This document shows, in pieces, positions 56,530 through 56,834 of a stretch of 64,000 nt of DNA (position 1 is its first letter; every line of letters begins with the position of its first letter). Position numbers and translations under genes: made by a program. A model generated the notes under the pieces. It was given only the letters and a program-made list of their open reading frames with translations. It had not been told where the DNA came from and did no database searches. This stretch comes from Antechinus flavipes (lineage: Eukaryota): NCBI RefSeq assembly GCF_016432865.1, contig NC_067398.1:654906001-654970000 (forward strand). The letters run 5' to 3'.

Positions 56530-56834
56530 ATGTCCAGCAAGATGACAAGCGGCAGTGACATAGGTCAAGCGCGCCGGGCAGTGGAGCAGCTGCGGATGGA
56601 GGCTGGCATTGACCGTGTCCAGGTGAGGGCTCCAGACTGGGAGAGGATGGGCTGGGGAGGGATGGGTCTGGTCCTTGGTGACTAGCTAGGCCCCTGGTCT
56701 GGTCTTAGGTATCCAAGGCAGCAGGGGAGCTCTTGCAGTACTGTGTGGAACACGCCAAGAGTGACCCATTCCTCATGGGCATCCCAGCTGCTGTCAATCC
56801 CTTCAAGGAGAAGAAGCCATGTACCATCCTGTGA
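56530..56834 (+). CDS. GNG14: G protein gamma subunit 14, 2 coding exons, 72 aa
   Basis: Exons 56530-56622 and 56709-56834, joined across an 86-nt GT-AG intron. Protein: [72 protein letters not shown]. It has the GGL-domain pattern, NPF motif and CAAX, and the family-typical intron position. It lies between DHPS and FBXW9. AATAAA at 57235-57240. Confidence 0.9.

What the first reader, a model, noticed from the sequence alone, without database searches (positions are those of the whole stretch)
56530..56834. Intact, prenylatable GNG14 G-gamma gene hidden from the ORF track
Sequence: two exons give a clean 72-aa G-gamma with NPF and CAAX box CTIL. Established: a terminal Leu predicts geranylgeranylation and membrane anchoring. 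The protein resembles the GNG12/GNG7 group. From memory, the human locus between DHPS and FBXW9 encodes a shorter, putative GNG14 ending ...NSFKEKKPYAIL, lacking the CAAX cysteine and the VSK segment. Inference: GNG14 is a real, ancestral therian G-gamma subunit, functional in marsupials and degraded in the human lineage. That would make it an essentially uncharacterised G-beta-gamma signalling component.
Basis: partly seen in the sequence, partly recalled or inferred. Interest (0 to 1): 0.75.

Follow-up and report, generated by a model that had tools for sequence, protein, structure and literature searches.

The report
Known GNG14 G-gamma gene, intact
This is the antechinus copy of GNG14, a small two-exon gene for a lipid-anchored G-protein gamma subunit that is intact and strongly conserved in marsupials and monotremes but broken in great apes; databases and a 2025 paper already say so, so the finding is correct but not new.

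Summary
Exon 1 (56530-56622), an 86-nt GT-AG intron and exon 2 (56709-56834) encode a 72-residue G-gamma with NPF and a CTIL prenylation box. The window is Antechinus DNA (assembly GCA_016432865.2). Both exons match a RefSeq protein named GNG14 isoform X1 at 100%.

Across antechinus, Tasmanian devil, monito del monte, koala, platypus and echidna, dN/dS is 0.02-0.06 and the splice sites are kept. The ORF is therefore under strong purifying selection.

Three corrections apply.
- The story is published (PMC12462614): the gene is coding in most mammals and a pseudogene in great apes.
- The gene is older than therians. Monotremes have it in the same gene neighbourhood, and shark and zebrafish orthologues are reported as habenula markers.
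- It is hidden only from this scan's ORF track.

One test failed to confirm. Contigs from four public runs cover the locus without splicing, and none shows the 56622/56709 junction. Contigs cannot prove absence.

The scan's notes hold no earlier GNG14 finding. Function remains untested anywhere.

The parts
56530..56622 (+). GNG14 coding exon 1: 31 codons from the ATG, encoding the N-terminal helix of G-gamma
   Evidence: It is 100% identical to P0140 residues 1-31. It is conserved, with the same GTGAGG donor, in 6 species.
56623..56708 (+). Phase-0 GT-AG intron of 86 nt. If retained it brings an in-frame TAG after 20 extra codons.
   Evidence: Intron length is 86-89 nt in marsupials and 551-554 nt in monotremes, at the same codon. 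The position matches fish GNG12.
56709..56834 (+). GNG14 coding exon 2: 41 codons plus TGA, the GGL domain core
   Evidence: Pfam PF00631 at E=1.5e-12. It is 100% identical to P0140 residues 32-72.
56796..56804 (+). NPF motif (residues 61-63 of the 72)
   Evidence: N, P and F are invariant columns in the alignment of 9 GNG14 proteins.
56820..56831 (+). CAAX box CTIL (Cys69). The terminal Leu predicts geranylgeranylation.
   Evidence: Cys and the final IL are invariant in the alignment. Human and chimp have Tyr in place of Cys. The Leu rule is established knowledge of CAAX prenyltransferases.
56508..56529 (+). Pyrimidine-rich tract and an AG directly before the ATG: the presumed acceptor of coding exon 1, implying an upstream non-coding exon
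   Evidence: A CAG immediately before the ATG is kept in all 6 species. The platypus and wallaby models join an upstream exon here. This is an inference.
55996..56056 (+). Possible 3' part of an upstream 5' exon, ending at a GTAAGG donor (56057)
   Evidence: The N-terminal extension of wallaby isoform X1 resembles the translation of window ORF 55713-56075. Contigs of X19 and X20 start at 55996 and 56036. This is an inference and the exon's start is unknown.
57235..57240 (+). AATAAA, candidate GNG14 poly(A) signal. It would give a 3' UTR of about 410 nt.
   Evidence: The X22 contig ends at 57247 and depth is zero until 57388.
49424..51871 (-). DHPS exons, the upstream neighbour, transcribed divergently
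   Evidence: ORFs. Pfam DS PF01916 at E=2.6e-14.
57388..61734 (-). FBXW9, the downstream convergent neighbour. The F-box exon is at 61066-61734, the annotated range of the FBXW9 model starts near 57723 (L001 position 4194), and the 3' end lies near 57388 after the minus-strand AATAAA at 57411-57406.
   Evidence: (F-box-like at 1.4e-7, plus WD40).

Best explanation
This is the Antechinus orthologue of GNG14, a canonical heterotrimeric G-protein gamma subunit. The two coding exons are spliced at 56622/56709 to give a 72-residue protein.

By analogy with G-gamma-2, its two helices bind a G-beta propeller as an obligate dimer. Cys69 of the CTIL box is geranylgeranylated, the last three residues (TIL) are cleaved and the new C-terminus is methylated, which anchors G-beta-gamma to the membrane for GPCR signalling.

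Shown here: the gene anatomy, family membership, orthology by neighbouring genes, and strong purifying selection.

Inferred: splicing in this species, G-beta binding, prenylation, and the tissue of action. The tissue may be lateral or ventral habenula neurons, judging from the shark and zebrafish reports.
For: - Anatomy.
- Pfam G-gamma on exon 2.
- The exons are 100% identical to RefSeq/UniProt protein P0140, named GNG14 isoform X1.
- P0140 aligns with solved G-gamma-2 over residues 8-71 at E=7.7e-21.
- The window is identical to GCA_016432865.2 over 6305 nt.
- DHPS lies upstream and FBXW9 downstream in the window. A convergent WD40 gene of about 455-476 residues (the FBXW9 position) lies just downstream in every mammal locus read, with F-box hits in possum, platypus and echidna. 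DHPS is listed upstream in possum and wallaby.
- Six species keep the ATG, the GTGAGG donor, the AG acceptor, the stop codon and the CAAX box.
- Nei-Gojobori dN/dS is 0.02-0.06, with dS up to about 1.2. Binomial P for so few replacement changes is 1.6e-7 (antechinus-Dromiciops) to 1.4e-14 (antechinus-platypus).
- Flanking DNA differs by 19-22% against 3-7% in the exons.
- The intron position is identical to that of fish GNG12.
- PMC12462614 states that GNG14 is clearly coding in most mammals.
- A public Logan contig from a relative with a placental-type sequence (organism not named) carries the junction already spliced.
Against: Contigs of four public runs (three from this species, one from a close relative) are colinear with the genome across the 86-nt intron and across 56057-56529. 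No 56622/56709 joint was reported. These are contigs of unrecorded library type, which drop minor variants and carry no strand, so this is missing confirmation rather than refutation. No biochemical or genetic study of GNG14 turned up in the library.
Confidence: 0.9

Rival explanations
1. The locus is transcribed in dasyurids mainly as unspliced or intron-retaining RNA. Little or no 72-residue protein would then be made in the sampled tissues. Either the gene is silenced at the splicing level in this lineage, or splicing is confined to a small cell population.
For: All four contig sets are colinear through both introns, at word depth 18-33. The RefSeq models with a 38-nt mini-intron in four marsupials suggest that the annotation pipeline also met read-through RNA.
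Against: dN/dS of 0.02-0.06 and conserved splice sites over roughly 60-180 million years can only be maintained through the spliced reading frame. Retention introduces a stop. Contigs cannot show absence of a minor spliced form. The antechinus-devil comparison (2 synonymous, 0 replacement changes) has too little power to detect a recent loss.
Confidence: 0.06
2. The real product is the 88-residue 'isoform X2'. It would use a donor at 56670/56671 and a 38-nt intron, inserting 16 residues between the two helices.
For: It is annotated by RefSeq in antechinus and devil (P0001), with 89-residue equivalents in possum and Dromiciops.
Against: A 38-nt intron is below the usual working size for the mammalian spliceosome (general knowledge). 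The insert is absent from monotreme and placental proteins and is poorly conserved even among marsupials. It would interrupt the conserved K/Q|VSK junction shared with GNG12.
Confidence: 0.02
3. It is a copy or retrocopy of GNG12 or GNG7, and not a distinct GNG14 gene.
For: The closest non-GNG14 hits are named gamma-12 or gamma-7 and are 65-69% identical to the platypus GNG14 query.
Against: It has the family intron, so it is not a retrocopy. The position beside FBXW9 is shared across marsupials and monotremes, with DHPS upstream where the locus reached that far. Fish GNG12 genes sit beside a different gene, an L7Ae-fold GADD45-like gene.
Confidence: 0.01

Closest known systems
[quoted passage not shown]
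   Same: It has the same two coding exons, the same neighbours and the same 72-residue length. It is identical to the devil protein, differs by 1-2 residues from other marsupials and by 5 residues from the 72-residue platypus and echidna reading.
   Different: Nothing of substance. Marsupials have Q instead of K at the exon junction and a CTIL or CVIL box, where most placentals have CAIL.
Human and chimpanzee GNG14 (putative protein, judged a pseudogene in great apes)
   Same: Same locus and the same overall sequence.
   Different: Both apes have Tyr in place of the CAAX Cys. Human also lacks VSK at the exon junction and has several radical substitutions.
GNG12
   Same: It is the nearest paralogue group. 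It has 72 residues, an MSSK start, an intron after residue 31 and a C-terminal box ending in Leu.
   Different: It sits at a different locus, beside a GADD45-like gene in fish. Its hallmark motifs are DPLL and ENPFKDKK, against DPFL and NPFKEKK here.
G-gamma-2 (GNG2) in solved G-protein heterotrimers, e.g. 1gp2
   Same: Full-length alignment of residues 8-71 at E=7.7e-21. This is the basis for the mechanistic model of G-beta binding.
   Different: It is a different paralogue. No GNG14 structure or assay exists.

Membership tests
Heterotrimeric G-protein gamma subunit (Pfam PF00631, G-gamma/GGL) | GGL domain match above the curated cut-off | tested here: met
   Exon 2 scores 47.8 bits against a cut-off of 27.1, E=1.5e-12, covering profile positions 25-69 of 69.
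Heterotrimeric G-protein gamma subunit (Pfam PF00631, G-gamma/GGL) | N-terminal helix plus C-terminal segment that align over the full length with a G-gamma solved in complex with G-beta | tested here: met
   P0140, identical to the two exons, aligns with G-gamma-2 over residues 8-71 at E=7.7e-21. Exon 1 alone gave no Pfam hit.
Heterotrimeric G-protein gamma subunit (Pfam PF00631, G-gamma/GGL) | C-terminal CAAX box with Cys at position -4 | tested here: met
   CTIL followed by a stop codon. Cys is invariant in the 9 aligned GNG14 proteins.
Heterotrimeric G-protein gamma subunit (Pfam PF00631, G-gamma/GGL) | Conserved phase-0 intron between the two coding exons | tested here: met
   The intron follows residue 31 here and in 5 other mammals, and sits at the same position in three fish GNG12 loci.
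Heterotrimeric G-protein gamma subunit (Pfam PF00631, G-gamma/GGL) | Binds G-beta, is prenylated and is membrane-anchored | not testable with these tools
   This needs co-expression and prenylation assays.
GNG14 orthologue group | Best matches are GNG14 proteins, and the sequence is identical to an annotated GNG14 | tested here: met
   hits named gamma-14; accessions; 100% identity.
GNG14 orthologue group | Position between DHPS and FBXW9, convergent with FBXW9 | tested here: met
   In the window. In devil, Dromiciops, koala, possum, opossums, glider, wallaby, platypus and echidna. FBXW9 is identified there by size, orientation and WD40 hits, with F-box hits in possum, platypus and echidna. 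DHPS is listed in possum and wallaby.
GNG14 orthologue group | Distinct locus from the nearest paralogue, GNG12 | tested here: met
   Fish proteins named gamma-12 lie beside an L7Ae-fold (GADD45-like) gene, not beside FBXW9.
GNG14 orthologue group | Spliced mRNA in this species | tested here: inconclusive
   Four contig sets are all colinear with the genome, with no junction seen. Contigs cannot show absence.

The most novel reading that the evidence does not exclude
GNG14 is a strongly conserved gnathostome G-gamma whose mRNA is productively spliced only in a restricted neuronal population, such as the lateral or ventral habenula. Elsewhere the locus yields mostly intron-retaining, non-coding RNA. 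On this reading marsupials show detained-intron control of a G-protein subunit, and the loss in great apes removed a habenula-specific signalling component.
Probability: 0.12. Interest if true: 0.45.

Novelty: already known. Interest (0 to 1): 0.2.

Why it matters
GNG14 would be a fourteenth G-gamma subunit that most mammals keep under tight selection and great apes have lost, yet nobody has tested what it does. That gap is real and worth filling, for example with a mouse knockout or G-beta pairing and habenula expression studies. This window adds one more intact orthologue and a dN/dS figure for marsupials and monotremes.

Tried and rejected
- **Joined protein not searched.** I searched the exons by reference. 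For full-length comparisons I used the database twin P0140, after showing it is identical to both exons. dN/dS counts were made per exon and summed.
- **RNA junction test.** The look-up of sequencing runs listed no holder recorded as RNA. Read laying had only contigs, all unspliced.
- **Marsupial spliced ORFs in Logan gene calls.** None turned up. No unspliced marsupial ORFs turned up either, so this absence tells nothing.
- **DNA not served.** The opossums, possum, glider, wallaby and shark loci gave no DNA because the files were too large. Only their gene neighbours could be read.
- **Bacterial promoter/terminator scan.** Irrelevant for a mammal.
- **Searches not used.** I skipped the large representative-protein search and structure prediction because the family was not in doubt.

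Full report
**What is in the sequence.** On the + strand an ATG at 56530 opens 31 codons that end in CAG|GTGAGG at 56622/56623. After 86 nt, a CTTAG| acceptor at 56708/56709 opens 41 codons and a TGA ending at 56834. Exon 2 ends in [12 protein letters not shown]: NPF lies at 56796-56804 and the CTIL box at 56820-56831. If the intron is read through, the frame stops after 20 extra codons.

**Family.** Exon 2 alone matches Pfam G-gamma (PF00631) at 47.8 bits against a cut-off of 27.1, E=1.5e-12. Exon 1, at 31 residues, is too short to score alone. Instead I showed that exon 1 and exon 2 are each 100% identical to residues 1-31 and 32-72 of the stored protein P0140 and used that entry for full-length work. 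P0140 aligns with G-gamma-2 from solved heterotrimers over residues 8-71 at E=7.7e-21.

[quoted passage not shown] The top hit is labelled Antechinus. The locus fetched for that protein, from GCA_016432865.2 record CM028217.1, is identical to window 53530-59834 over all 6305 bases. P0140 carries accession XP_051827578.1, named 'isoform X1', next to XP_051827579.1, the Antechinus 'isoform X2'. That the first accession is the Antechinus entry is my inference from the adjacent numbering. The same sequence is listed for the Tasmanian devil. The gene is therefore publicly annotated and is 'hidden' only from this scan's prokaryote-style ORF list.

**Neighbours.** In the window, ORFs upstream on the - strand match deoxyhypusine synthase. 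ORFs downstream on the - strand match an F-box/WD40 protein. WDR83-like and alpha-mannosidase exons lie further upstream. A convergent WD40 gene of about 455-476 residues lies just downstream of GNG14 in devil, Dromiciops, koala, possum, two opossums, a glider, wallaby, platypus and echidna. F-box hits are listed for possum, platypus and echidna. DHPS is listed upstream in possum and wallaby.

**Selection.** I located both exons in six loci. All six keep the ATG, the GTGAGG donor, an AG acceptor, the stop codon and the Cys-x-I-L box. Intron length is 86-89 nt in marsupials and 551-554 nt in monotremes. Nei-Gojobori counts, made per exon and summed, give dN/dS of 0.02-0.06:

| Pair | Synonymous changes | Replacement changes |
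|---|---|---|
| antechinus-Dromiciops | 12 | 1 |
| antechinus-koala | 8 | 2 |
| antechinus-platypus | 29 (dS about 1.2) | 5 |

The chance of so few replacements under neutrality is 1.6e-7, 1.6e-4 and 1.4e-14 respectively. Against Dromiciops and koala, 400-nt flanks differ at 19-22% of aligned sites, the intron at 12-13% and the exons at 3-7%. The spliced reading frame is thus under strong purifying selection. The antechinus-devil pair (2 synonymous, 0 replacement changes) is too close to test on its own.

**Paralogy.** After the GNG14 proteins, the next hits are fish proteins named gamma-12 or gamma-7, 65-69% identical to the platypus GNG14 used as query. Two of them lie beside a 157-159-residue L7Ae-fold gene, which I read from memory of the human GADD45A-GNG12 neighbourhood as GADD45-like. 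They have the intron after residue 31, at K|VSK, exactly as here. So 'resembles the GNG12 group' is right, and the shared intron position is a further family trait.

**Human contrast.** The stored human protein (P0115) has 69 residues, ends KKPYAIL and lacks VSK. The chimpanzee protein keeps VSK but also has Tyr for Cys. No human DNA was fetched or compared.

PMC12462614 (Database 2025) describes the same picture:
[quoted passage not shown] - Human has a frameshift near the 5' splice site of exon 2 that costs three conserved residues.
- The human gene has no transcript or protein evidence.

**Age.** Monotremes carry the gene beside FBXW9, so it predates therians. A shark protein (P0118) with GNG14-like motifs has a convergent WD40 gene downstream. 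PMC11589584 lists Gng14 as a catshark lateral-habenula marker, with the zebrafish orthologue si:dkey-117i10.1 in ventral-habenula clusters. I did not test shark or fish orthology beyond that one neighbour.

**RNA.** No holder of the stretch is recorded as RNA. I laid three runs of the same organism (X19, X20, X22) and one of a close relative (X1). All are contigs. Every contig is colinear with the genome from 55996-56120 to at least 57247. That span includes the 86-nt intron and the interval 56057-56529, which I take to be an upstream intron. No 56622/56709 joint was listed.

In X22 one contig ends at 57247, 7 nt after a + strand AATAAA at 57235. Depth is then zero until 57388, 18 nt beyond a - strand AATAAA at 57411-57406. 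That patchy depth points to RNA rather than genomic DNA, with convergent GNG14 and FBXW9 3' ends about 140 nt apart. Strand and library type are not recorded, so this is an inference.

The close relative's contig shows one listed difference in the 219 coding bases (56607 C>T, synonymous) and about 40 in the flanks. Seven differences were not shown in the output.

The requested junction test therefore did not confirm splicing. It does not refute it either, because contigs drop minor forms. A Logan contig from another species, whose protein is of placental type, carries the junction already spliced in a 99-residue ORF. The sample's organism and library type are not known to me.

**Isoform X2.** The 88-residue RefSeq model P0001 requires a donor at 56670/56671 and a 38-nt intron. 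Its 16-residue insert is absent from monotremes and placentals. I regard it as a modelling artefact of intron-retaining RNA.

**Mechanism and verdict.** The most likely reading (0.9) is an ordinary functional G-gamma. By homology with G-gamma-2, it forms an obligate dimer with G-beta, is geranylgeranylated on Cys69 (the Leu rule for CAAX boxes is established knowledge), loses its last three residues (TIL) and is carboxymethylated.

Only sequence, neighbouring genes and selection are shown here. The biochemistry is inferred. No functional study of GNG14 turned up. The scan's own notes hold no earlier GNG14 finding. Notes on neighbouring windows place TNPO2 just beyond this window and name the genome as a dasyurid, which fits. 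The finding is correct, well observed and already known.

Noticed in passing
window 56623-56708, with an alternative donor at 56670/56671: RefSeq 'isoform X2' models need a 38-nt mini-intron that inserts 16-17 intron-derived residues. They have 88 residues in antechinus and devil and 89 in possum and Dromiciops. This is probably an annotation artefact of intron-retaining RNA.
   Followed up: partly
window 55996-57247: Contigs of four public runs cover the whole GNG14 locus unspliced, including 56057-56529 and the 86-nt intron, at word depth 18-33. Either intron retention dominates in those samples or the spliced form was dropped by the assembler.
   Followed up: partly
window 57235-57411: There are convergent poly(A) signals: AATAAA on the + strand at 57235 and on the - strand at 57411-57406. 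Contig ends at 57247 and 57388 put the GNG14 and FBXW9 3' ends only about 140 nt apart. In three of the four runs the contigs run straight through the gap.
   Followed up: partly
window 56523-56558: An out-of-frame ATG 7 nt upstream of the start codon opens an 11-codon ORF. It lies in the presumed upstream intron, so it would matter only in unspliced RNA.
   Followed up: no
P0062, P0073 and similar proteins of 97-105 residues: In many placentals (bats, pika, hamster, New World monkeys) the short GNG14 intron is in frame and free of stops. Read-through models therefore carry a 25-33-residue insert at the K|VSK junction. One such ORF was seen on 119 Logan contigs.
   Followed up: no
window 54077-54540: These ORFs look, from memory, like the C-terminal end of LINE-1 ORF2. 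A retrotransposon fragment seems to lie between DHPS and GNG14.
   Followed up: no
window 40000-48400: Exons of a family-38 glycosyl hydrolase (MAN2B1-like, - strand) and a WD40 protein (WDR83-like, + strand) lie upstream of DHPS. From memory, this extends the gene order shared with the human 19p13 region.
   Followed up: partly
window 56110-56140: An A/T-rich low-complexity run holds a - strand AATAAA (56115-56110). Two contigs (X22 and X1) start just here, so their left ends may reflect assembly breaks rather than transcript ends.
   Followed up: no
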